From Macrostomum lignano (taxonomy: Eukaryota), in the NCBI GenBank assembly GCA_002269645.1, contig NIVC01000943.1, positions 1 through 64,000 on the forward strand: DNA of 64,000 nt, read 5' to 3'. Shown in pieces: positions 11,217 to 62,234 of this stretch (position 1 is the stretch's first letter; each line of letters starts with the position of its first letter). The position numbers and the translations under genes are program-made. The notes below the pieces were generated by a model. It searched no databases and was not told where the DNA came from. It saw only the letters and a program-made list of their open reading frames with translations.

Positions 11217-14200
11217 ATGCAAGAAAGAAAACGAACTATTTTAATAGGTGTAGCTGGAGGCAGCTCATCTGGAAAGGTAAAAATCACTTTTCTTGTTTTA
11301 AAAAATAAAAAAATATTTCTACTGGAATGACAGCTGAAATGGTAAGGTCTGGAGTGCATTAAGGACAAAACAAGGTCATTGCTAGGCCTCTATGCTGACT
11401 AGTGACTACATGCATATACAACAACAACAACAACAAAATACGCTGTCATGATGGTAAAAGTCAGCGTCACAGGGCGCGCTTCATGGCTTGGGCGCGAACA
11501 AAGGCCGCGCCACCGGCAGTGTCCGGGGCGCCGGCATCAGCCAGCAGACAGTCGACATAACGCCGAGTTCGCGCTTGACCTCGCCGGTAGGGTGCCTGCA
11601 GCGTGAGCAGCAGCACCTCCTGCACCGGCTGTGGGCAGTACGACTCGGCGCGGATGAGATGGCCTGCGAGCTGGAGTCGCCGACGGGGCAGTAGATCACT
11701 TGGACGTGGCAGGCCAGCGCGGCGATAGAGTGCCGCGTTGGTAACTCGCTCGACGCCGATGTTGAAGGCGGCGCGTAGCAGACCAGCGTGCGCCGCATCG
11801 ACTTGCTGTTCGAGTGAGTCCGTCAGCGTCCAGGTCTTGGCGTTGTACAGCAGGACGGTCTCGATTACCGCCTGGAACAGCGCCGCCCTCTGGCGGTCCG
11901 GTAGGGCCTCGGACTGCAGGACTGCCCTCACAGAACGAAAGGCAGCCCAGGCAAGCCCGCGGCGGCGTCGCAGGTCCTCGCGAGCGTCTGGAACCAGACC
12001 GCCGAGGTAGACGAACTGCTGACATCGCGGGAGTTCGGTCGCCTGCCCGTCAGCGCCTCGGCAAAATATTGCAGCCTCGATGTCATCCGGCATGCAGAGC
12101 ACAACGGTCTTCTGCGTGTTGACCACCAGGCCGACACTCGCTGCAACGGCAACCAGCCTGTCCAGCTGCCGTTGGGCGCCCTTGACGGTCGAGGACAGCA
12201 GGGCGAGGTCGTCGGCGTAGCCAAGCACGCTGAGCCGCTTCTCCGGTTGACGTCGACCCACGCGTCGCTGCAGCAGAAAACCGTCGTCGTCGGTAGGAAG
12301 AGCAGTCCGCAGCACCCAGTCAAGCACCAGGACGAACAGGAACGGCGCCAGCGTATCTCCCTGAAGCACTCCGGAGGATGTCTCAAAGGAGTCCGATAGG
12401 CCGTCCGGTGTTGTCACAGCAGCTGTCGTATCACGGTACATCGCCATGATGGCGGAGATCAGCTGCTCAGGCACGTTGTACGCGCGGAGCACCATTGGAA
12501 GCACGGCTCTGACAACCGAGTCGAATGCCTTCTTGAAATCAATAAAGATTAACATGCATATGTATATGCTATTGCTACCCCTATGCATCTGTCAAAGCTT
12601 ATCAATATGCACTTTGCACATTCAATGGCTGATAATAGAATGGCCACATCCAGGAAGATAGCCTGTATATACTCAAATTAATATTAGTAACCCAAATTTG
12701 TTTTAGGGCCTATACTAGGGCCTAGTCCAAGACCAATGTATGCCAATTTTTTTCATCCCATTATAAGCAATAATGGGCATTCTCAAATCATTCATTCAAC
12801 TCTCTTTTCAATATAACAATTATAAATCAGTATATAAATATACAAATATCTCAATTGACATAGCATAAATATACTTAGGAGCAAAGTGTCTCCAGGGTCT
12901 AGATTGTGTAGTCCATTTTGCGGATGGTGGGGTGTATGCTGGAAAATTCCGGTGTACACTTGATTTCTGTGGCGTACACCAGCGTACATTTCTTGGCTGT
13001 GTACAGTGTGGCATACAGTGTGGTATATGGGGACTGGCGTAAAAATTAATATAAAGAATTTTTGTGCTTTTTCTATGTTAAGTTATTTCAAAAACCATTT
13101 TTTCTGACAAGTATAACTTTGGCCGTCAACTTTTCCATCAACTTTTCTGTTAACTTTTCCGTTAACTATTCCGTCAACTATTCTGTCAACTTTTTGTGTT
13201 AGTAGAATAAATAACTTCCGTTAACTATTCCGTCAACTTTTCCGTCAACTTTTCCATCAACTTTTCCGTTAACTTTTCCGTTAACTATTCCGTCAAGTAT
13301 TCCGATAAATTCTTCCGTTAACTCTTCCGTCAACATTTCCGTTTACTATTCCATTAACTTTTCCACCAAATATCTCATCACTTTTCCATTAACTATTTCA
13401 TCAACATTTATGCAAGTCCGTAAAATATATTCTATCAAATTTTTTGTGTACTCTGAATGGAAAGTGTTAATTTTTTGCATAAGTGCAGTTTCCGTAGCAA
13501 TTTTTATACTGCTTTAAATTTGTTGAGTATATACACATGTACACGTATAAATTAGAAATAAAAAAAACACGCAAAAATTTCCAGCGCAACATGTTCCAGA
13601 ATTTAATTGGTATTGCTGCACTACCTGCACTATAACATCTGCACTTGTTCATTGATTTATCTTTGTGAAATAAAGCGCTGGTACTAGGGAAAATGGAAAA
13701 GATGTACGTTGTTACTAACACAGGCTTGTTTTTTCATTGATATATATAAGCATGCAAACACAATAAATGATCAAAGAGCTACTCGCATGATGATCCTATT
13801 TGAGAAAGTCACATATGTTTTTTCAGAACAATAAATTGTTGACGGAAAATTTGACGGAATACTTGACGGAAAAGTTGACGGAAAAGTTAACGGAAAAGTT
13901 GACGGAAAAGTTAACAGAAAAGTTAACGAAAAAGTTGATGGAAAAGTTAACGGGAAAGTTGACAGAAAAGTTGACGGCCAAAGTTATACTCGTTTTTTCT
14001 GCTACTATTTTCTCATTTACCAATCATTTTAATTATCAGAATTGTCACGACAATCGTCATATTGTTATCAATTTTTTGTAGTTTAAATTTAAATTTAAAT
14101 ATTTGTTGATTTTTTTACTGTTTTTTAAGTTGGCGCACATTTAAAATCTGTTGGCGTACAATTGAAAATTCAATAAAAATGTGTCTGGCATACACAGAAA

Positions 14201-39200: not shown

Positions 39201-42200
39201 GTGGTGACAACCAATCAGAGAGCTGGTATGGTGGCATGTGGCAACCAATCAGACAGCTAATATGGTGGCAACCAATCAGAGAGCTGACATGGTGGCAACC
39301 AATCAGAGAGCTGGTATGGTGGCAACCAATCAGAGAGCTGATATGGTGGCAACCAATCAGAGAGCTGATATGGTGGCAACCAATCAGAGAGCTGATATGG
39401 TGGCAACCAATCAGAGAGCTGGTATGCTGGTAACCAATCAGAGAGCTAGTATGGTGACAACCAATCAGAGAGCTAGTATGGTGACAACCAATCAGAGAGC
39501 TCGTATGGTGGCAACCAATCAAAAGGCTGGTTTGGTGACAACCAATCAGAGAGCTAGTATGGTGGCAACCAATCAGAGAGCTAGTATGGTGGCAACCAAT
39601 CAGAGAGCTGGTATGGTGGCAACCAATCAGAGCTAGTATGGTGGCAACCAATCAGAGAGCTAGTATGGTGACAACCAATCAGAGAGCTCGTATGGTGGCA
39701 ACCAATCAAAAGGCTGGTTTGGTGACAACCAATCAGAGAGCTAGTATGGTGGCAACCAATCAGAGAGCTAGTATGGTGGCAACCAATCAGAGAGCTGGTA
39801 TGGTGGCAACCAATCAGAGAGCTAGTATGCTGGTAACCAATCAGACACAAGCAGTTATATTTGCAGAAGGGCTGTAGGCACCCTGGCGCAACGCCTTCGG
39901 CGAAAGCGTCCCACAAACAGCGCTAAGCAATTCTTTCCTTTCCCCTGACTCCTGAGAGCATACAAGTGCACGGATATTTTACAAATCTGTAACATCTGTG
40001 ACTACCTGTAATTTGTAGAGCACACCCGTTTTCGTTTAGCATTTACCTACTAGATCATATGTTGTGAATTATATTTTTAATTTCCATAAATTGGACCAAA
40101 CTAAAGATACTACTGACTTTGTTATTAATAAGTAGTAATCTGTACGCTTAACAGAAAAAAGCTTAAATAAATTTTGCAAATAATTTTTGTATCACATCTA
40201 ACCATTGACTAATGATATGCTCAGTGCCTACTGATGTGAGTAGTTTAAATGTGCATTGAGCTTAAACTAACTCTCATAAATGGCAGCGTGCGCAATTGCC
40301 AACAGACCATAAATCTTCTACATCGTTCAAGCAGCAAAACGTAATCATTAGTAATCGTAGGCAATCAAGGCCCATTCCCCTTGAGCCCGCACTCACTCGG
40401 GTGTATATGTACAGCGTCTACTGATAGTAGTCTCTGTGCCTTGATCACCGGGTTGGTCGTTGGTTGCTCTCGCGGGCGAGGACCGCCCAACAAGCTCCAG
40501 GCCAATAGTCAGCGGAACGGGCACTGGCTGAAGCCCCCCTGGGACTATCCAAAGCCCCTGGGACTGGCCGAAGCCCTCTGGGACTGACCGAAGCCCCCTG
40601 GGACTGGCCGAAGCCCCCTGGGACTGGCCGAAATCCCCTGCGACTAGCCGAAGCCCCCTGGGACTGGCCGAAGCCCCCTGGGACTGGCCGAAGCCCCCTT
40701 GGGACTGGCCGAAGCCCCCTGCGACTGGCCGAAGCCCCCTGGGACTGGCCGAAGCCCCCTGGGACTGGCCGAAGCCCCCTTGGGACTGGCCGAAGCCCCC
40801 TGGGACTGGCCGAAGCCCCCTGGGACTGGCCGAAGCCCCCTGGGACTGGCAAGCAGCACCACCGCCTTCAACTGATCCCCTCGCACCCCTCCTCCCTTCC
40901 GGCTAGCCAAAGACCAGAAGCAGGGCGACGTGGTGGTGAAGGCCCAGGTGCTGGCCGGAGGCCGCGGCAAAGGCTTCTGGAACAGCGGCCTGAAGGGCGG
41001 CGTGAAGATCGTCTTCAATCCCGAGGAGGCTCGCGACGTGTCCTCAAAGATGCTGGGCCACAAGATCTTCACCAAGCAGACTGGCGATGCCGGCCAGACC
41101 TGCTCCACCGTGATGGTGTGCGAGCGCAAGTACTCCAGACGGGAGTTCTACTTCGCCATCACCATGGACAGGAAGCACCGCGGCCCGGTGCTCATCGGCA
41201 GCTCGCAGGGCGGCGTCAACATCGAGCAGGTCGCCAAGGAGAATCCCGAGGCCATCATCGCTGTGCCGGTGGACATCGAGACCGGCATCACTGAGGAGGT
41301 CGCCACCGAGATGGCCAAGAAAATCGGCTTCACTGGCGACAAGCAGAGCAAGGAGGCCGGCCAGTACATCGTGAAGATGTACGACTTGTTCATCAAGTCC
41401 GACGCCACGCTTATTGAGATTAACCCCATTGCTGAGGACACCGAGGGCAGGGGTAAGTCAGCGGCTTGGGCCTTCTGAGTTCCCTTTTATAGGCATCTTC
41501 TGATCTACCTTCCTGATCTCACCTCACTAATCTCCCCTCCCCCGATCTCCCCTCCCAATCTCCCCTCTCCGATCTCTCCTCCCCAATCTCCCCTCTCCGA
41601 TCTCTCCTCCCCAATCTCCCCTCCCTGATCGCCCCTCCCTGATCTCCCCTCCTCAATCTCCCCTCTCCAATCCCCTCCCGATCTCCCCTCCCCAATCTCC
41701 CCTCGCTGATCTCCCCTCCCCAATCTCCCCTCGCTGATCTCCCCTCCCCAATCTCCCCTCGCTGATCTCCCCTCCCCAATCTCCCCTCGCTGATCTCCCC
41801 TCCCCAATCTCCCCTCGCTGATCTCCCCTCCCCAATCTCCCCTCGCTGATCTCCCCTCCCCAATCTCCCCTCGCTGATCTCCCCTCCCCAATCTCCCCTC
41901 TCCAATCCCCTCCCGATCTCCCCTCCCGATCTCCCCTCCCCATTCTCCCCTTTCCCATCTCTCCTCCCCATTCTCCCCTCCCCAATCTCCCCTCGCTGAT
42001 CTCCCCTCCCCAATCTCCCCTCGCTGATCTCTCCTCCCTGATCTTCCCTCCTTGGTTGCACTTCAACTCCCCTCACACCTGAGTTGCCGCCGCCCGCTGG
42101 CCCGCAGTTCTGTGCATGGACTGCAAGATGAACTTCGACGCCAATTCGGAGTTCCGCCAGCCGGAGATTTTCTCCCTGCGCGACTGGAGCCAGGAAGACG

Positions 42201-44182
42201 AGCGCGACGTCGCCGCCGAGAAGGCCGGCCTGAACTACATTGCCCTGGATGGCAACATCGGCTGCCTGGTGAACGGCGCGGGCCTGGCCATGGCCACCAT
42301 GGACATCATCAAGCTGCACGGCGGCTCCCCCGCCAACTTCCTGGACGTTGGCGGTGGCGCCACGGCCAATCAGGTGGGTAGCCTGGTGGATAGGGGTGGG
42401 AATTCAGGCAGGGTAGAAGGGAATTCAGGCAGGATAAGGGAAAATTCAGACAGGGTAGAAGGGAATTCAGGCATGGTATGCTAGAGGGGAATTCAGACAG
42501 GGCATGCTAGAGGGGAATTCAGACAGGGTAAATAATTTAGGTAGGGTAGAGGGAAATTCAGGCAGGTTAGAGGGGAATTCAGACAGGGTAAAGGGGAATT
42601 CAGACAGGGTAGAGGGGAATTCAGGCAGGTTAAAGGGGAATTCAGACAGGGTATATATAAAGAAAGCGCTGCCGTCACAGGTCACGGAGGCCTTCCGCAT
42701 CATCACAAGCGACCCGGCGGTGAACGCCATCCTGGTGAACATCTTTGGCGGCATCATGCGCTGCGACGTGATCGCCCAGGGCATCATCACGGCCGCCAAG
42801 GAGCTGAAGCTGCGCATGCCCATCGTGGTGCGGCTGCAGGGCACCCAGGTGGAGGACGCCAAGGCGCTGATCTCCTCCAGCGGCATGCGCATTCTCGCCT
42901 GCGACAACCTCGACGACGCCGCCCAGATGGTGAGCTGCCGAGTAGCGCATTGGGGGGATGCTCAAATATTTATCAATAAAATTACTCCAGAGGCTGTCGA
43001 TAATTGCAGCGCAATCCTTGGCATTGTTGCCGAGCGCCCAGTTCGATCCCCGCGTGTTGCCAGGGCCCGCTGTTTAATTATTTACCTAAGCCCAATCAAT
43101 ACCCGCCTCTCTTCTTTGCTCCGCCGCCGCCTCGCTACCCAACACTGGCGTTCGTTTCCAGACTCGCCTGCCTCTCCATCGCTCAGTTGGTTTGGCACTC
43201 CAAACTCTCTCTTGTCTTGCCGTGCTTCAAGGGAGCCGTGGGCCAGCAATCTGGAGCCAGACAGCAACTTCCCTCTCCAGTGTTACCAGATTCTGAGAAA
43301 TCAAATCATTTTGTGTATTTTGCACGAGAACGATTGCAGCAGTGCAGTCGCTATTTGTCAGTTTCTTTGGGGTGAAACAGCTGTTTATAGCGTATTGGCA
43401 TCTCAGAGTTGCTCAATCCAGATTCTGCCTCGATGTCTCCCCGGCTGCAGGCGGGAGCCCTGGAGGCCATGAATTATTTATTGATCCGGGCTCTGCCCTA
43501 CTCAGCTCAAGGCGCCGCAGGAAAATATCGAATACCTGCAGAAGTAGCTGGAGTGCGACTTTAGGCAAGCTTTAATTAACCTGGCCAGGTGGACTGGCAG
43601 TTTCTGGCTCCTTGGGCTGGTTAGGGCTGCTGCACTTTAAATCATATGAAAATGATCTTCCCGACTGCTTGGCTTCTGTTATTGTTACGATATCGCATAC
43701 TGGCGAATTCTTTACGTAGCATTAAGCCTTTAAAGGACAGTCATGTTACTCCTGCCGTTTACCAAAAGTTGTGGTAATTTTTGCTTTAGGGCTTCTTTCA
43801 CAGGTAAGTCGCATTTTTGGTCAAAAATTAAGTCGCGTGGCCAGTGTAAATCAGGGGGGGTTGCGCATGTATGGTCTCAACAGAGCGAACCTCGGGCGCT
43901 CACTCGGGGTGCAGGCATGCGGAGCTGCTCGACGATAATTCCGTCTGACTCTCGTGCCGCCACCCCCGGTTCCATTCGAGCCGGGTACATGTCAGAGCGT
44001 GTACATGTCTGATGGCGCTGTGCACCCCGTGTGCTCAAGGCGGGCCAGCGGAATGGGCAGTATCTCAGCTGACTAACTAATACAAACCCCCCCCCACCCC
44101 GCCGCAGGTGGTGAAGCTGGCCAACATCGTGGTGCTCGCCAAGGACGCCGCCGTGGACGTGAAATTTGAGCTGCCCATCTGA
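33276..44182 (+). CDS. SUCLA2: Succinyl-CoA ligase [ADP-forming] subunit beta, mitochondrial. Exons: 33276-33329, 38646-38817, 40907-41452, 42108-42373, 42681-42929, 44108-44182
   Basis: Transit peptide [18 protein letters not shown], then [63 protein letters not shown] and the C-terminus VDVKFELPI typical of the ADP-forming beta. All phases are consistent. The exon 2 acceptor could be 38646 or a nearby in-frame alternative. Confidence 0.95.
39201..39844. repeat. 27-bp intronic minisatellite GGTGGCAACCAATCAGAGAGCTAGTAT (~24 copies)
   Basis: Visible directly. Confidence 0.95.
40530..40850. repeat. 20-bp intronic minisatellite GGGACTGGCCGAAGCCCCCT
   Basis: Visible directly. Confidence 0.95.
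41500..42045. repeat. 28-bp C/T-rich intronic minisatellite GATCTCCCCTCCCCAATCTCCCCTCGCT
   Basis: Visible directly. Confidence 0.93.
42385..42650. repeat. 21-bp intronic minisatellite GGGGAATTCAGACAGGGTAGA
   Basis: Visible directly. Confidence 0.9.
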
Positions 44183-45785: not shown

Positions 45786-46237
45786 TCCCCCTGAATCTCC
45801 CTGCGTATGCCGCGAAAAACAAGCGGGTTTTTCAGTTCTATTTGCCGTGTGCTCAGCCAAATGATGAAGCTGAGGGAGGGGCAGCATCCGGCCCGGCCGA
45901 GCTGCATGCCAATCAGGCAGACCAGGTGCGCTCAGCCTGTTTGAATTGGGCGTGGCCCCGCATTGATGAACTCTAAAGCCGGGTCTGAGTGGCCCTGCAA
46001 GTCTGTTTGCATTCCATTCCGAGTCTCCGGGCAGGAAATTCCAGTGTATTAGTACAGTATATGGCTGATAATCCTCTTGTTTGAGTGCGACTGACTCCGC
46101 AATGCACTGGTGCAGTGCAAATCTTAGTCGATATTTCTAATATGCAAAGTCATGCGCCTCATTTATATTAGACAATACTAAGCAAGCTTTTTACATGGTA
46201 TGTTTTGTGGTCACAAACTCTCATATGATTGTGTCGA

Positions 46238-46595
46238 CACCTTGATGAGATCGCTACCTTGATGATGTCGCCACCTTGAGGATGTCGCCACCTTGATGAT
46301 GTCGCCACATTGAGGATGTCGCCACCTTGATGATGTCGCCACCTTGATGATGTCGCCACCTTGATGATGTCGCCACATTGAGGATGTCGCCACCTTGATG
46401 ATGTCGCCACCTTGATGATGTCGCCACATTGAGGATGTCGCCACCTTGATGATGTCGCCACCTTGATGATGTCGCCACCTTGATAATGTCGCCACATTGA
46501 GGATGTCGCCACCTTGAGGATTTCGTCATCAGCTTGATGATGTCGCCACCTTGATAATGTCGCCACATTGAGGATGTCGCCACCTTGATGATGTC
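46238..46595. repeat. 18-bp minisatellite CCTTGATGATGTCGCCAC
   Basis: Visible directly. Confidence 0.93.
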
Positions 46596-46614
46596 GATCT
46601 CAGACCCGGTTTGG

Positions 46615-46743
46615 TCACCACCAGGACCTGAAAACGTCGCCCATGGCCAGGATGATGAAGATGGTGATGGCCATGGCCAGGCAGGTGATTATCGCGATGA
46701 AGATTTGAAACTTGGTCTCGCAGCAGCACTTGATCCAGGCCAT
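46615..46743 (-). CDS. 42-aa single-pass membrane ORF MAWIKCCCETKFQIFIAIITCLAMAITIFIILAMGDVFRSWW (not in the ORF track)
   Basis: Strongly GC3-biased codons like the real exons nearby, a ~21-aa hydrophobic span and a juxtamembrane CCC. Confidence 0.55.
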   Translation of the reverse strand: MAWIKCCCETKFQIFIAIITCLAMAITIFIILAMGDVFRSWW

Positions 46744-46804
46744 GATGCAGCCAGCAGCCTCAGTGAGTCACAGGAGGCGCATTCTCTCTGCTCACCAGGC
46801 GCTC

Positions 46805-48235
46805 TTAGATAATGCTGGACGGAATGAAGTTCCAGCCAAGTTTGTGAAGGCGGCTTCGGAAGCAATCCATGCAGCCTGAGCTAATGCCGGACCGAGCTCG
46901 CGCTATTGGCCCGACGTCGCAGCCAATCAGGAAGCGGCTACTGCTCGAATAGCTGCTGCTATTATTTTGATTTTTTATTAGAGTTTCAAGAAAGTGTTTT
47001 AAAAATTTTTAATTTAATTCGATTCCAGTCTTGCAAAGCAGGGTTTATTTGTTTCGAATTAAACTGTTATTTAAGTCACAAAAATCGATGAGAGTTACGA
47101 GTAGTTTGGAGCTGCCATCAGCATCAAGTAATTGCATCAGTCAAGGATGGAATTTGGCGCACCAGACCCGACCAGCGCACTGCTTGTTGCTGTGTGAGGG
47201 GATGCAGTAGTCCCTGCAGTTCCTGCAGTGCTTAGACAGCACCCTGCCGGTGTACACCGTCCGCTTCAGCTGGCCGTCGATGCCGCGGTGCATGATGTTT
47301 CGGTGGAACCGGCAGACCCGGCAGACCTCGCAGCTGGCCTGGCAGAAGGAGAATCTCGAATAGCGGCGGCAGGAGACGGGCAAGCAGTTGCGCTCCTCCT
47401 CGCACTTCTGGCTGGAAGGATTTCGGCCCCTTGAAATTGCGAGCTTGACCCACCGGAGTGCTTGACCCGTGGGAGTGCTTGACCCACGGGAGTGCTTTAC
47501 CCACAGGAGTGCTTTACCCACGGGAGTGCTTTACCCACGGGAGTGCTTGACCCACGGGAGTGCTTGACCCACGGGAGTGCTTGACCCACGGGAGTGCTTT
47601 ACCCACAGGAGTGCTTTACCCACGGGAGTGCTTTACCCACGGGAGTGCTTGACCCACGGAGTGCTTGACCCACGGAGTGCTTGACCCACGGGAGTGCTTG
47701 ACCCTCCGGAGTGCTTGACCCACGGGATGACCCACGGGAGTGCTTGACCCACGGAGTGCTTGACCCTCCGGAGTGCTTGACCCACGGGATGACCCACGGG
47801 AGTGCTTGACTCTCCCGTGCTTGACCCATGGGTGCTTTACCCACGGGAATGCTTGACCCATGGGTGCTTTACCCACGGGAATGCTTGACCCACTGGATTG
47901 CTTGACCCACACGGGATTGCTTGACCCACACGGGATTGCTTGACCCACTGTTTACCTATGAAGCTGCGTATCACATCTACTGGGGCCTATCAGCATACAG
48001 GTGGCCCCCAACTCAGCCCGCACTCACCTGGGTCCCGACCCGCCTTTCAGTGCCGAACCTGCAAAGAAAAAGCAGTCGGGCAGTCACGCTAGTCTGCAAC
48101 AATCCCCGTCAAGCCTCAATTTCCTAGAATTTCCCGCAATTTGAAGCGGCTCTCACTGAGATCGAAGCCGGAGCTGCTGGCGACAGCGCAGGCCAGGAGG
48201 GCCACCACTATCAGCTGGAGGACTGCAGCGCGCAT
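46805..48235 (-). CDS. Secreted cysteine-rich protein with an ShK-like segment. Exons (-): 48235-48157, 48058-48028, 47979-47956, 47411(or 47429)-47173, 46875-46805
   Basis: Signal peptide MRAAVLQLIVVALLACAVASSS. Phases are consistent (1,2,2,1). The mature part has CEEERNCLPVSCRRYSRFSFCQASCEVC and CRNCRDYC...CAGCMDC. The last donor (GTCGGG) is weak. Confidence 0.6.
47443..47948. repeat. 17-bp intronic minisatellite GGGAGTGCTTGACCCAC
   Basis: Visible directly. Confidence 0.93.
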
Positions 48236-60687: not shown

Positions 60688-62234
60688 TTGGTTTTGACAA
60701 TTAATATGAGAAGATGGACAATCAAAATGAAAACAGCCGTAGATCTGCATGCAGAAGCTCAGCGCAGCTTTGCAGCAGCTGCGGCTTAGGCCATAGACTT
60801 TTTTGACGATCGAAATGAGAATTGGTCAATCAAAATGGCAACGCGCAGTTAGTTTAGCGAGGCAGCACATTTAAGCATTAGCCAGCCATCTTTCTCAGCC
60901 ATCTCTCTAGTTTGCTGGTAATAGCACCACATGTGAGTCCAGAGGACCGACGTCGGCTCATCGAGGCAATAGATCGAGGCACACCGGTTAAGGACGCAGC
61001 AATAATCCTTCAGCTATCAAGTTCAACTGCTCATCGCATCGTGAGGCTGTACAGGAATGAGGGAAGGATAGACAGTATGCCTCGTGGAGGCCGAAAAAAA
61101 GCAAGGTGCAAGGTGGATGAGGAGATTCGTGAATTTCTGGAAGCAGAGGTGAACCGCAACCCCTTCCTCACCCTGAGCGAGATGGCACAGCGGGTCAACA
61201 ACCATTTCTTCGACAAACTGGACATCTCGTACAGAAGTGTGGACAGAATTCTACAGGGATTGATGTACACAGTTAAGCTGGCCACCAAGGGCACGGATGT
61301 GCGCTCGAGAACGAACAGCCAGGAGAACATTGAGGCTCGGTGAGAGTACGCATAGTTCGTGCTGAACTTGGACCCTGCAGTACGATTGGTATTTCTCCAT
61401 GAAACGGGCTTCAATTTGTGGACCAGACGATCGCAGGGTCGCAGCCTGAAGAGGTGAGGCGAAGGGTCACAACGCAGCGCGGACCAAATGTGATTGTTTG
61501 CATGGCGATAGCCGATGAGTTTGGCCTCGTGCACTCGTCGGTGTTCCGAGGAGGCCAGACGAACGCCAGATTTCAGATCTTCATCGACGAACTGAACTGT
61601 GGCTTCGTGGCTTGTCGTGATGGACGGTCCGCATTTCCATCGAGCAGCGCGCATTCCGCAACATCTGCAGCACGCTGTGTCCATCCGCATTCTTCTGGGA
61701 TATTCACCTTTTCTGAACCCTTCGGAATTCGCCAACAGTTGCCTCAAGGCCAAGATCAAAAGCAGACTGGCGCAGCCTGACATCGTTGAGGAAGAGGCAG
61801 TTGCCCCAGAAGGCATGAACCAGGAAGAGTGGCGTTACATGCTGCTGGAGAGAGTGGCACGTGAGTCACTGCCTGAAGCCGTGACTCCGGACAAGGCAGC
61901 TGCGTAGGAATTGCGCTGCTTCCGTCATCTTGGACGCTGCCTTGCTGGGCAGGAGTTCTGAACCTATGCTGTTGGACTGCTGTGTTTCCATCTTTTTTCT
62001 GACTGTGTTGCCATTTCTGTTGTTAATTTCTTGCTTCTATTGTTAAATTTTCATTTAAATAAACGTTCACACTGCTCCCGTTGCCATTTTGATTGACCAA
62101 TTCTCATTTCGATCGTCAAAAAAGTCTATCGCCTAAGCCGCAGCTGCTGCGAAGCTGAGCTGAGCTGCTGCATGCAGATCTACGGCTGTTTTCATTTTGA
62201 TTGTCCATCTTCTCATATTGATTGTCAAAACGAA
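60688..62234 (+). mobile_element. Defective Tc1/mariner (IS630-family) DNA transposon with 156-bp TIRs and a TA TSD
   Basis: TIRs at 60688-60843 and 62079-62234, with TA at 60686-87 and 62235-36. The transposase remnant has an N-terminal HTH (LSSSTAHRIV), LVFLHETGF (first D changed to H), VVMDGPHFH and YSPFLNPSE. It contains stops and frameshifts. Confidence 0.9.

What the first reader, a model, noticed from the sequence alone, without database searches (positions are those of the whole stretch)
46615..46875. A membrane-anchor ORF sits in frame behind the stop codon of the secreted Cys-rich gene: readthrough, dicistron or recent truncation
After ...SSII-TAA come GAG CGC CTG, then a 37-nt GTGAGC...GAG segment (46795-46759), then GCT GCT GGC TGC ATC ATG GCC TGG.... 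Removing that segment puts the GC3-rich 42-aa TM ORF (CCC + hydrophobic helix + FRSWW) exactly in frame with the upstream protein, separated only by the TAA. Options are (i) stop readthrough giving secreted and membrane-tethered forms, (ii) a dicistronic or trans-spliced microprotein 60 nt downstream, or (iii) a nonsense allele or sequencing error in a type-I membrane protein. Neither ORF is correctly shown in the ORF track.
Basis: partly seen in the sequence, partly recalled or inferred. Interest (0 to 1): 0.7.

Follow-up and report, generated by a model that had tools for sequence, protein, structure and literature searches.

The report
Unannotated 42-residue membrane microprotein gene candidate
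In this flatworm (Macrostomum lignano) sequence, the small membrane-helix reading frame is most likely a separate, unannotated 42-residue microprotein gene next to a secreted cysteine-rich gene, not a hidden membrane anchor reached by reading through that gene's stop codon.

Summary
The window is Macrostomum lignano contig NIVC01000943.1. The TAA does not belong to the secreted Cys-rich gene. That gene (Mlig020678.g2, PAA74511.1) ends at TGA 47143-47141 and is followed by a conserved AATAAA. The '...SSII' frame is a 21-codon ATG ORF with no coding signature. It can be joined to the Cys-rich CDS only through a non-consensus GTCGGG donor.

The 42-codon ORF looks like real coding sequence. It has GC3 0.90 and the strongest third-position periodicity of 307 ATG ORFs in the window. 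Its synonymous-codon log-odds is +28 bits, in the top 0.1% of windows. It encodes a 23-residue hydrophobic helix with a KCCC motif before it. A second genomic copy carries an identical ORF and the same TAA, which rules out sequencing error.

No homologue was found and no RNA data could be reached. The best reading is a stand-alone smORF, transcribed from its own CCAAT-box promoter or SL-trans-spliced in a two-gene operon. Readthrough and the nonsense-allele idea are rejected. The finding is of modest interest.

The parts
46615..46743 (-). 42-codon smORF (MAWIKCCCETKFQIFIAIITCLAMAITIFIILAMGDVFRSWW, stop TGA 46617-46615). The start context is A at -3 and G at +4. It predicts a single-pass membrane microprotein.
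   Evidence: Sequence. GC1/2/3 = 0.29/0.43/0.90, rank 1 of 307 ATG ORFs for GC3 periodicity. Codon log-odds +26.3 bits, top 0.4% of windows. Synonymous-only log-odds +28.3 bits, top 0.11%. Maximum 19-residue hydropathy 3.03, rank 2 of 307. 100% identical in paralogue L002.
46759..46795 (-). 37-nt GTGAGC...CTGAG segment. It is a candidate 5'-leader microintron. Alternatively, its 3' AG (exon start 46758) is a candidate spliced-leader acceptor.
   Evidence: The donor matches the M. lignano GT[G/A]AG consensus (PMC8629364) and is one of three such sites on this strand in 48235-46600, with about 3 expected by chance. The acceptor is GAG, not the preferred CAG or YTNCAG. It has the best pyrimidine tract of the local AGs and is the only one that puts the SL's terminal AUG in frame with the ORF. 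Flatworm microintrons peak at about 37 nt and are biased to the 5' end of genes (PMC6530080). Splicing is not shown.
46805..46870 (-). 21-codon upstream ORF (MDCFRSRLHKLGWNFIPSSII, TAA 46807-46805).
   Evidence: Sequence. Codon log-odds is only 0.08 bits per codon, or 0.19 synonymous-only. The only substitution between the two genomic copies across 46940-46600 is a non-synonymous change in it (46863 G>C, Cys3Ser). The ATG has T at -3.
46768..46782 (-). Four-codon mini-uORF (ATG CGC CTC CTG TGA, MRLL*) inside the 37-nt segment, in the frame of the 42-aa ORF. It would be removed if the segment is spliced out.
   Evidence: Frame translation (...ERMRLL*LTEAAGCIMAW...).
46903..46930 (-). Promoter-like block: an inverted CCAAT box (CTGATTGGCTG, which reads CAGCCAATCAG on the other strand), the palindrome CGACGTCG, and a forward CCAAT box (GGCCAATAG).
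   Evidence: Read directly. 100% conserved in L002. Function is inferred from general knowledge of NF-Y sites and was not tested.
47044..47049 (-). AATAAA poly(A) signal that closes the Cys-rich gene, about 90 nt after its TGA.
   Evidence: It is conserved with its context in L002, whereas the second AATAAA at 46979 is mutated to AATGAA in L002.
47141..48235 (-). Secreted Cys-rich gene Mlig020678.g2 (PAA74511.1; UniRef name 'ShKT domain-containing protein'). Exons are 48235-48157, 48058-48028 and 47411-47141. Introns are 98 and 616 nt (GTGAG...CAG). Stop is TGA 47143-47141.
   Evidence: 100% match to P0001/P0002. Locus identity. Exon reconstruction translates exactly to P0002.
46232..46596 (.). 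17-nt minisatellite (21.3 copies) starting 19 nt after the smORF stop, within the presumed 3' UTR.
   Evidence: TRF. Only about 3 copies in paralogue L002. No significant similarity to the ORF.

Best explanation
The 42-codon frame at 46743-46615 is most likely a stand-alone small ORF gene of Macrostomum lignano that was never annotated. It lies immediately downstream of the secreted Cys-rich gene Mlig020678.g2 and on the same strand, but it is not part of that gene.

Shown: the Cys-rich CDS ends at TGA 47141 with its own conserved AATAAA. The small ORF has the codon usage of genuine M. lignano exons. It encodes one strongly hydrophobic 23-residue helix. It is identical in a second genomic copy.

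Inferred: its mRNA starts in one of two ways. Either transcription starts at a TATA-less promoter marked by the twin CCAAT boxes at 46930-46903, or the spliced leader is trans-spliced at the AG ending at 46759. The second route would make it the downstream gene of a two-gene operon and could add six residues (MAAGCI) from the leader's own AUG. The 21-codon 'SSII' frame and the 4-codon MRLL frame are upstream ORFs or outron sequence, not protein ends. The 37-nt segment may be a flatworm-type 5' microintron, and its removal would delete the second upstream AUG.

The peptide is too short for co-translational targeting. It would insert post-translationally with the N-terminus in the cytosol (Lys5 and Lys11 precede the helix, and only 8 residues follow it), be S-acylated on Cys6-8, and act as a small membrane-embedded regulatory subunit. 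The frame coincidence with the upstream TAA is chance.
For: Organism and locus. Cys-rich CDS end and exon structure. Conserved AATAAA at 47049.

Coding signature of the ORF: GC3 0.90 against GC1 0.29 and GC2 0.43, rank 1 of 307 ATG ORFs. Codon log-odds is +26.3 bits (0.63 per codon, against 0.42 for the neighbouring CDS). All five other frames score lower or contain stops. Only 0.4% of 42-codon windows reach this score, and those lie in other evident exons. Synonymous-only log-odds is +28.3 bits, top 0.11%.

Hydrophobic helix: 19-residue hydropathy 3.03, rank 2 of 307. The ORF is not a tandem repeat and is not related to the adjacent minisatellite. The start codon has A at -3 and G at +4. The ORF is identical in L002.

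The annotation pipeline used TransDecoder, and non-coding transcripts were dropped from the GenBank submission (PMC5730564). TransDecoder's default minimum ORF length, about 100 residues (my knowledge), would exclude a 42-aa ORF, so its absence from the annotation is uninformative. Same-strand spacing of about 150-270 nt from the upstream poly(A) signal fits M. lignano operons, where 18% start with a non-trans-spliced gene (PMC8629364).
Against: There is no transcript, ribosome or peptide evidence, and none could be reached with these tools. No homologue was found anywhere: word search, exhaustive phmmer of 1.84 billion representatives with only a chance WD40-repeat match, and Pfam.

The two genomic copies are almost identical across the whole block 48640-46600, introns and UTR included (0.15-0.6%, against 2.5-5% in the flanks). 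The ORF's identity therefore says nothing about purifying selection. No canonical poly(A) signal follows the ORF until 44435; the nearest variants either are not conserved in L002 or are weak. No local acceptor matches the YTNCAG trans-splice motif, and the 37-nt segment ends in GAG.
Confidence: 0.6

Rival explanations
1. Chance ORF in non-coding DNA. The region is intergenic, or the 3' or outron part of a non-coding transcript. The 42-codon frame is never translated, and its codon-like periodicity and hydrophobicity are accidents of local composition in a very repeat-rich genome.
For: No homologues. Not annotated. No canonical poly(A) signal nearby. ORFs of 30-60 codons are common in this window, with 307 starting at ATG. 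A weak 12-nt periodicity sits inside the ORF (TRF score 33).
Against: The ORF ranks first of 307 for GC3 periodicity and second for hydropathy at the same time. Its synonymous codon choice is in the top 0.11% of windows, and the few equal-scoring windows fall in other evident exons. It has an optimal start context. It is not a tandem repeat and does not resemble the adjacent minisatellite.
Confidence: 0.25
2. Alternative last exon of the Cys-rich gene. A phase-0 donor inside exon 3 (for example GTCTGG at 47167) would splice to the AG at 46759, giving ...NKQCAGR-AAGCIMAWIKCCC...RSWW. This would be a membrane-tethered isoform made by alternative splicing, with no readthrough.
For: The frames are compatible: 47167 is a phase-0 GT, and the exon starting at 46758 is in the ORF frame. 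The gene has a signal peptide.
Against: None of the 13 GT sites in exon 3 matches GT[G/A]AG, and six of them are phase 0, so compatibility is expected by chance. The acceptor is a disfavoured GAG. The intron would contain the conserved AATAAA and the CCAAT boxes. The isoform would lose the twelfth Cys, leaving an odd number of cysteines in the ectodomain. The Lys- and Cys-rich flank would face the lumen, against the positive-inside rule and against S-acylation. Both deposited protein models end in FHP.
Confidence: 0.05
3. The Cys-rich gene splices from GTCGGG (47172) to 46876 and ends ...SSII-TAA, the 37-nt intron is removed, and ribosomes occasionally read through the TAA to add the membrane helix.
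For: The arithmetic works: a phase-1 donor at 47172, an acceptor CAG at 46876, and 24 nt between the TAA and the ATG after removal of the 37 nt.
Against: The annotated CDS stops at 47141. The donor is non-consensus. The 'SSII' exon has no coding signature and carries the only substitution in the region, which is non-synonymous. UAA followed by G is the least leaky stop context (established knowledge). No stimulatory RNA structure is present. The route needs two unproven introns plus readthrough.
Confidence: 0.02
4. The TAA is a sequencing error or a recent nonsense allele that truncates a type-I membrane protein.
For: None beyond the frame coincidence.
Against: The same TAA and identical flanks are present on a second, independently assembled contig (L002) that differs elsewhere by substitutions, indels and minisatellite copy number. 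No relative with a continuous ORF exists in 5.8 billion clusters. The upstream frame is not coding-like.
Confidence: 0.01

Closest known systems
smORF-encoded single-pass membrane microproteins (animal SMIM proteins; sarcolipin, phospholamban and sarcolamban type regulators)
   Same: Size (42 aa), with one central hydrophobic helix filling most of the peptide. Short charged N-flank and very short C-tail, implying tail-anchor-like post-translational insertion. Missed by annotation pipelines that apply ORF length cut-offs.
   Different: No sequence similarity to any of them or to anything else. The KCCC juxtamembrane cluster and the terminal WW are not features of those families. Expression and function are untested.
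Spliced-leader-resolved operons of Macrostomum lignano (Ustyantsev and Berezikov 2021, PMC8629364)
   Same: Two same-strand genes with about 150-270 nt between the upstream poly(A) signal and candidate acceptors. The upstream gene has its own TATA-like promoter, as in the 18% of operons that start with a non-trans-spliced gene. The SL ends in AUG, which would be in frame at the 46758 acceptor.
   Different: No YTNCAG acceptor motif. No SL-read evidence is available here. A twin CCAAT-box block just upstream suggests an independent promoter instead.
uORF-bearing mRNAs with leaky scanning or reinitiation
   Same: One or two short upstream ORFs (21 and 4 codons) precede a main ORF. The first uAUG is in a weak context (T at -3) and the main AUG in a strong one.
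   Different: It is unknown whether the transcription start lies upstream of the uAUGs at all.
Programmed stop-codon readthrough extensions (for example C-terminal extensions after UGA-CUAG in animals)
   Same: Only the formal layout: an ORF, a stop, and an in-frame hydrophobic extension.
   Different: The stop is UAA-G rather than a leaky UGA or UAG context. The extension is in frame only after a hypothetical splice. The upstream ORF is 21 codons long and not coding-like. No stimulatory structure is present.
Flatworm microintrons (Ershov et al. 2019, PMC6530080)
   Same: Length of 37 nt, equal to the reported peak. [quoted passage not shown] Consensus GTGAG donor. No polypyrimidine tract required.
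   Different: The acceptor is GAG rather than the consensus CAG, whereas microintrons are reported to have splice sites closer to consensus than other introns. Splicing has not been observed.

Membership tests
smORF-encoded transmembrane microprotein | ATG-initiated ORF under 100 codons with a favourable start context | tested here: met
   42 codons, with A at -3 and G at +4. It is the first ATG after an in-frame stop.
smORF-encoded transmembrane microprotein | A hydrophobic segment long enough to span a bilayer | tested here: met
   Residues 12-34 (FQIFIAIITCLAMAITIFIILAM). The maximum 19-residue Kyte-Doolittle mean is 3.03, rank 2 of 307 ORFs. No dedicated TM predictor was available.
smORF-encoded transmembrane microprotein | Coding signature (species codon usage, 3-nt periodicity) in that frame only | tested here: met
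   rank 1 of 307 for GC3 periodicity, log-odds of +26 to +28 bits, and the other frames negative or interrupted by stops.
smORF-encoded transmembrane microprotein | Conservation of the reading frame in other species, or purifying selection | tested here: inconclusive
   The only comparator is a 99.4%-identical paralogous copy in which neutral sequence is equally conserved. No orthologue could be reached.
smORF-encoded transmembrane microprotein | Evidence of transcription and translation | not testable with these tools
   Exact-product look-ups found nothing. No RNA-seq, Ribo-seq or proteomics access.
Programmed stop-codon readthrough | Leaky stop context (UGA or UAG with C or CUAG, or CARYYA) or a stimulatory downstream RNA structure | tested here: not met
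   The stop is UAA followed by GAG. The fold of the following 83 nt has z = -0.29.
Programmed stop-codon readthrough | The upstream ORF is a genuine coding sequence that is continuous in frame with the extension in the mature mRNA | tested here: not met
   The upstream frame scores 0.08-0.19 bits per codon. It is out of frame by 1 nt unless a hypothetical 37-nt intron is removed. The Cys-rich CDS ends 334 nt earlier.
Type-I membrane protein (signal peptide, ectodomain, TM helix, cytosolic tail) | One continuous ORF from signal peptide to TM helix, with the basic or acylated flank on the cytosolic (C-terminal) side | tested here: not met
   TGA at 47141 and TAA at 46805 intervene, and both are present in two genomic copies. 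Lys5, Lys11 and Cys6-8 precede the helix, and the tail GDVFRSWW is net neutral.
M. lignano SL trans-spliced operon | Adjacent same-strand genes with a repeat-adjusted intergenic distance under 1 kb | tested here: met
   AATAAA at 47049 to candidate acceptors at 46876-46759 is about 170-290 nt. Criterion from PMC8629364.
M. lignano SL trans-spliced operon | SL acceptor at the 5' end of the downstream gene (YTNCAG in 44% of sites; SL-containing reads) | tested here: inconclusive
   No YTNCAG among 21 AG sites. The best pyrimidine tract and the in-frame SL-AUG are at 46759/46758.
Flatworm microintron | [quoted passage not shown] | tested here: inconclusive
   37 nt, 5' leader position and a GTGAG donor are met. 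The acceptor GAG is off-consensus (PMC6530080). Splicing has not been observed.
ShKT domain (for the neighbouring Cys-rich gene) | Six-cysteine ShK-like pattern recognised by a family model | tested here: inconclusive
   UniRef names the protein 'ShKT domain-containing', and by eye the spacing C-x5-C-x4-C-x9-C-x3-C-x2-C fits. Pfam gave no hit at E<=10, PDB sequences gave none, and the AF2 model was too poor to use (pLDDT 48).

The most novel reading that the evidence does not exclude
The secreted ShKT-like peptide gene and the 42-aa membrane microprotein form a two-gene operon resolved by spliced-leader trans-splicing at 46759/46758. The leader's own terminal AUG would start translation and add MAAGCI to the microprotein. 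The pair would be functionally coupled, for example a secreted channel-blocker-like peptide co-expressed with a palmitoylated membrane partner that protects or tunes the producing cell.
Probability: 0.08. Interest if true: 0.55.

Novelty: new member of a known kind. Interest (0 to 1): 0.25.

Why it matters
If the ORF is translated, it is an orphan flatworm membrane microprotein that an ORF-length cut-off in annotation (TransDecoder, PMC5730564) would have missed. This suggests that the gene set of this model organism under-counts small membrane proteins. The locus is also a compact test case for how M. lignano expresses a gene packed about 200 nt behind another one. The candidate routes are an own promoter, a spliced-leader operon, a 37-nt microintron, upstream ORFs, and a leader-donated AUG. 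The more striking idea, one gene giving secreted and tethered forms by readthrough, is not supported, so the finding does not touch any long-standing open question.

Tried and rejected
1. Homology for the 42-aa peptide. The word-indexed search found nothing. Exhaustive phmmer gave one hit (E = 2.9e-6), which is a bacterial TIR/NACHT-WD40 protein matched on its repeat 'ITCLAxAGDIxxSGSxDxTLRSW'. I rejected it as a compositional or repeat coincidence. Pfam gave nothing.

2. Transcript evidence through exact-product look-ups. I tried the 42-aa ORF, the SL-AUG 48-aa version, the antisense 75-aa ORF, the overlapping 66-aa ORF, and the older ML2-assembly protein. All were absent.

3. Orthologue by synteny. 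I searched with the neighbouring succinyl-CoA ligase exon to reach other Macrostomum genomes. The best hits were 65% identical vertebrate or annelid proteins, with no Macrostomum entries and not even the window's own protein.

4. Using paralogue identity as evidence of constraint. I rejected this because the introns and UTR of the neighbouring gene are just as identical.

5. Origin of the ORF from the adjacent minisatellite. The local alignment was not significant (p = 0.15).

6. Readthrough-stimulating RNA structure. None was found.

7. Structure of the Cys-rich protein, to judge whether its C-terminus is integral. The single-sequence AF2 model had pLDDT 48 and was unusable, so no fold search was run. 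The PDB sequence search was empty.

8. Further exons of the small gene downstream. No minus-strand window between 46600 and 44200 reaches the coding score.

9. Literature. No paper mentions Mlig020678.
Full report
WHAT THE WINDOW IS. A search with the spliced Cys-rich protein returned a 100% identical GenBank protein of the free-living flatworm Macrostomum lignano, 'hypothetical protein BOX15_Mlig020678g2' (PAA74511.1). The contig that encodes it, NIVC01000943.1 of assembly GCA_002269645.1 (Mlig_3_7), is base-for-base identical to the reverse complement of window 37141-58268. The species matters for three reasons. About 30% of its genes receive a 35-nt spliced leader that ends in ATG. About 15% sit in operons with about 100-nt spacers (PMC8629364). 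More than half the genome is repetitive, and much of the DV1-line assembly is duplicated (PMC5730564).

CHECK OF THE OBSERVATION. ATG at 46870 opens MDCFRSRLHKLGWNFIPSSII, which ends in TAA at 46807-46805. GAGCGCCTG follows. GTGAGC...CTGAG occupies 46795-46759 (37 nt). GCT GCT GGC TGC ATC precedes ATG at 46743, which opens MAWIKCCCETKFQIFIAIITCLAMAITIFIILAMGDVFRSWW, ending in TGA at 46617-46615. Removing the 37 nt leaves 24 nt between the TAA and the ATG, so the frames coincide. Unspliced, the gap is 61 nt and they do not.

The attribution is wrong. The secreted Cys-rich gene has exons 48235-48157, 48058-48028 and 47411-47141, with GTGAG...CAG introns of 98 and 616 nt. My reconstruction translates exactly to the deposited protein and stops at TGA 47143-47141 (...CAKFHP). 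About 90 nt further on there is an AATAAA (47049) that is conserved, with its context, in the paralogous copy. The 'SSII' frame can be attached to this CDS only through a GTCGGG donor at 47172 and the CAG ending at 46876. Neither that GT nor any other GT in exon 3 matches the species' GT[G/A]AG donor consensus (PMC8629364).

IS THE UPSTREAM FRAME CODING? I trained a codon table on 893 codons of secure coding sequence from this same window: the Cys-rich gene, three succinyl-CoA ligase exons and the first exon of an EF-hand protein. On that table the 'SSII' ORF scores 0.08 bits per codon (0.19 with synonymous choice only). The Cys-rich CDS scores 0.42. The single substitution between the two genomic copies anywhere in 46940-46600 falls in this ORF and changes Cys3 to Ser. 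Its ATG has T at -3. It behaves as leader or outron sequence, not as a protein end.

IS THE 42-CODON FRAME CODING? The evidence here points the other way.
- GC content at codon positions 1/2/3 is 0.29/0.43/0.90. This is the strongest third-position excess of all 307 ATG ORFs of 30 codons or more on both strands of the 64-kb window.
- The codon log-odds is +26.3 bits (0.63 per codon). The other five frames score lower or contain stops. Only 0.4% of 42-codon windows outside the training genes reach this value, and they cluster in other evident exons.
- Restricting the score to synonymous choice, which removes any effect of the hydrophobic amino-acid composition, gives +28.3 bits and the top 0.11% of windows. 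The codons include 8 ATC against 1 ATA, 4 GCC, 4 TGC, 3 ACC and 3 TTC against 1 TTT.
- The peptide has one 23-residue hydrophobic stretch. Its 19-residue Kyte-Doolittle maximum is 3.03, second of 307, and the first is a minisatellite artefact.
- Trp residues sit at both ends, and Lys5, Cys6-8 and Lys11 lie on the N-terminal side.
- The ATG has A at -3 and G at +4.
- The ORF is not a tandem repeat, has no paralogue in the window, and does not resemble the 17-nt minisatellite that begins 19 nt after its stop.

SECOND GENOMIC COPY. The duplicate gene Mlig020678.g1 lies on contig NIVC01001315.1 (L002). There the TAA, the 37-nt segment and the whole 42-codon ORF are identical. This copy differs from the window elsewhere: five substitutions and three indels between 47445 and 46600, and about 3 rather than 21 minisatellite copies after the ORF. 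The TAA is therefore not a sequencing error or a private nonsense allele.

The identity is not evidence of selection on the ORF. The whole block 48640-46600, introns and 3' UTR included, differs by only 0.15-0.6%, while the flanks differ by 2.5-5%. That pattern looks like a young duplication or a conversion tract.

(i) Readthrough. This needs two unproven introns, one with a non-consensus donor. It needs a coding exon that does not look coding. It needs suppression of UAA-G, the tightest stop context by established knowledge, and there is no stimulatory structure (83-nt fold, z = -0.29). The Lys- and Cys-rich flank also precedes the helix. In a type-I anchor that flank would face the lumen, against the positive-inside rule and out of reach of cytosolic S-acylation. 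This option is rejected.
(iii) Nonsense allele or sequencing error. This is rejected by the second copy and by the absence of any relative with a continuous frame.
(ii) A separate microprotein. This is what the evidence favours, with the correction that the ORF 60 nt upstream is a 21-codon uORF, not the Cys-rich protein.

HOW THE SMALL GENE MAY BE EXPRESSED (INFERENCE). Two routes are open.
- Own promoter. At 46930-46903 there is an inverted CCAAT box in a perfect CAGCCAATCAG context, the palindrome CGACGTCG, and a forward CCAAT box. All are conserved in the second copy. This layout is typical of a TATA-less promoter, with a start somewhere around 46880-46810.
- Operon. The Cys-rich gene has its own TATA-like box (ATAAATA at about 48321). 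The distance from its poly(A) signal to candidate acceptors is about 170-290 nt, within the range used to call M. lignano operons, 18% of which begin with a non-trans-spliced gene (PMC8629364). None of the 21 AG sites matches YTNCAG. The AG ending at 46759 has the best pyrimidine tract and is the only one that puts the leader's terminal AUG in frame, which would give MAAGCI plus the ORF, 48 residues.

The 37-nt segment could also be a genuine microintron. Flatworm microintrons peak at about 37 nt, favour gene 5' ends and often lack a pyrimidine tract, and they were also seen in M. lignano (PMC6530080). Its donor is consensus but its GAG acceptor is not. GT[G/A]AG occurs three times on this strand between 48235 and 46600, namely the two real donors and this site, but about three are expected by chance. 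Splicing would remove a second upstream AUG (MRLL*, 46782-46768). A weakness of the stand-alone model is that no canonical poly(A) signal follows the ORF before 44435.

LIKELY FUNCTION (INFERENCE). A 42-residue peptide is released from the ribosome before its helix emerges. Insertion would therefore be post-translational and tail-anchor-like, with the N-terminus cytosolic, Cys6-8 S-acylated at the membrane interface, and only eight residues on the far side. Such peptides usually act as small subunits or regulators of larger membrane proteins. Nothing here identifies the partner.

A RESIDUAL FUSION MODEL. A phase-0 GT at 47167 could in principle splice to 46759 and give a tethered isoform without readthrough. 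Six of the 13 GTs in exon 3 are phase 0, so this compatibility is expected by chance. The donor and acceptor are poor, the intron would contain the poly(A) signal and the CCAAT block, and the twelfth cysteine would be lost. I give it 5%.

WHAT COULD NOT BE DONE. No homologue was found in 5.8 billion clusters or 1.84 billion representatives. The one hit is a WD40-repeat coincidence. No Pfam family matched. No transcript-derived product is on record. No route to other Macrostomum genomes worked. The annotation pipeline used TransDecoder, and non-coding transcripts were dropped from GenBank (PMC5730564). TransDecoder's default minimum ORF length, about 100 residues (my knowledge), would exclude a 42-aa ORF, so the lack of annotation says nothing either way.

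VERDICT. The best explanation is an unannotated, orphan 42-aa single-pass membrane microprotein gene (confidence 0.6), against a chance ORF (0.25). It would be a new member of a known kind, of modest interest.

Noticed in passing
window 48640-46600 versus 46262-45620 and other blocks; L002: The two duplicated loci (NIVC01000943.1 and NIVC01001315.1) differ by only 0.15-0.6% across the Cys-rich gene plus the small ORF, introns and UTR included. They differ by 2.5-5% in the flanking non-repetitive blocks. The low-divergence tract ends at the minisatellite after the ORF, which suggests a gene-conversion tract or uneven coalescence.
   Followed up: partly
window 47948-47443, 46596-46232, 49196-48666 and many others: Dense minisatellites. 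A 17-nt unit x 30.6 fills intron 2 of the Cys-rich gene. A different 17-nt unit x 21.3 sits just after the small ORF, against about 3 copies in the paralogue. A 15-nt unit x 35 lies upstream of the Cys-rich gene. They generate many long spurious ORFs in the ORF list.
   Followed up: partly
window 54055-50805, minus strand: Long ORFs (732 aa with an (SQSV)n run and a Cys-rich stretch; 282 aa with several hydrophobic segments) reach exon-level codon scores at 53275-52670 and 51479-50853. No gene is listed here in the GenBank record. This may be a multi-exon membrane-protein gene dropped because it overlaps repeats. Pfam gave only repeat-driven hits.
   Followed up: partly
window 40930-44182 (+) and 55348 onward (+): The neighbours are a succinyl-CoA ligase beta-subunit gene (448 aa; ATP-grasp_2 and Ligase_CoA), convergent with the small ORF, and a 770-aa protein whose first exon carries an EF-hand pair.
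   Followed up: partly
window 11467-12588 (-) and 60912-61343 (+): A reverse-transcriptase ORF (PF00078, E = 2e-17) looks like a non-LTR retroelement fragment. A helix-turn-helix ORF (HTH_32/HTH_23) is of the kind found in DNA-transposon transposases.
   Followed up: no
P0004 (bacterial protein, not in the window): The only database hit to the 42-aa peptide is a TIR/NACHT-WD40 protein. Its repeated unit 'ITCLAIAGDILISGS...LRSW' mimics 'IITCLAMAITIFIILAMGDVFRSW'. This shows how a short hydrophobic query can reach E = 3e-6 against a repeat protein.
   Followed up: yes
The word-indexed protein search with the window's own succinyl-CoA ligase exon did not return the M. lignano protein that the window encodes. 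All listed hits were about 305 aa or shorter. Negative results from that tool for this species should therefore be read with care.
   Followed up: no
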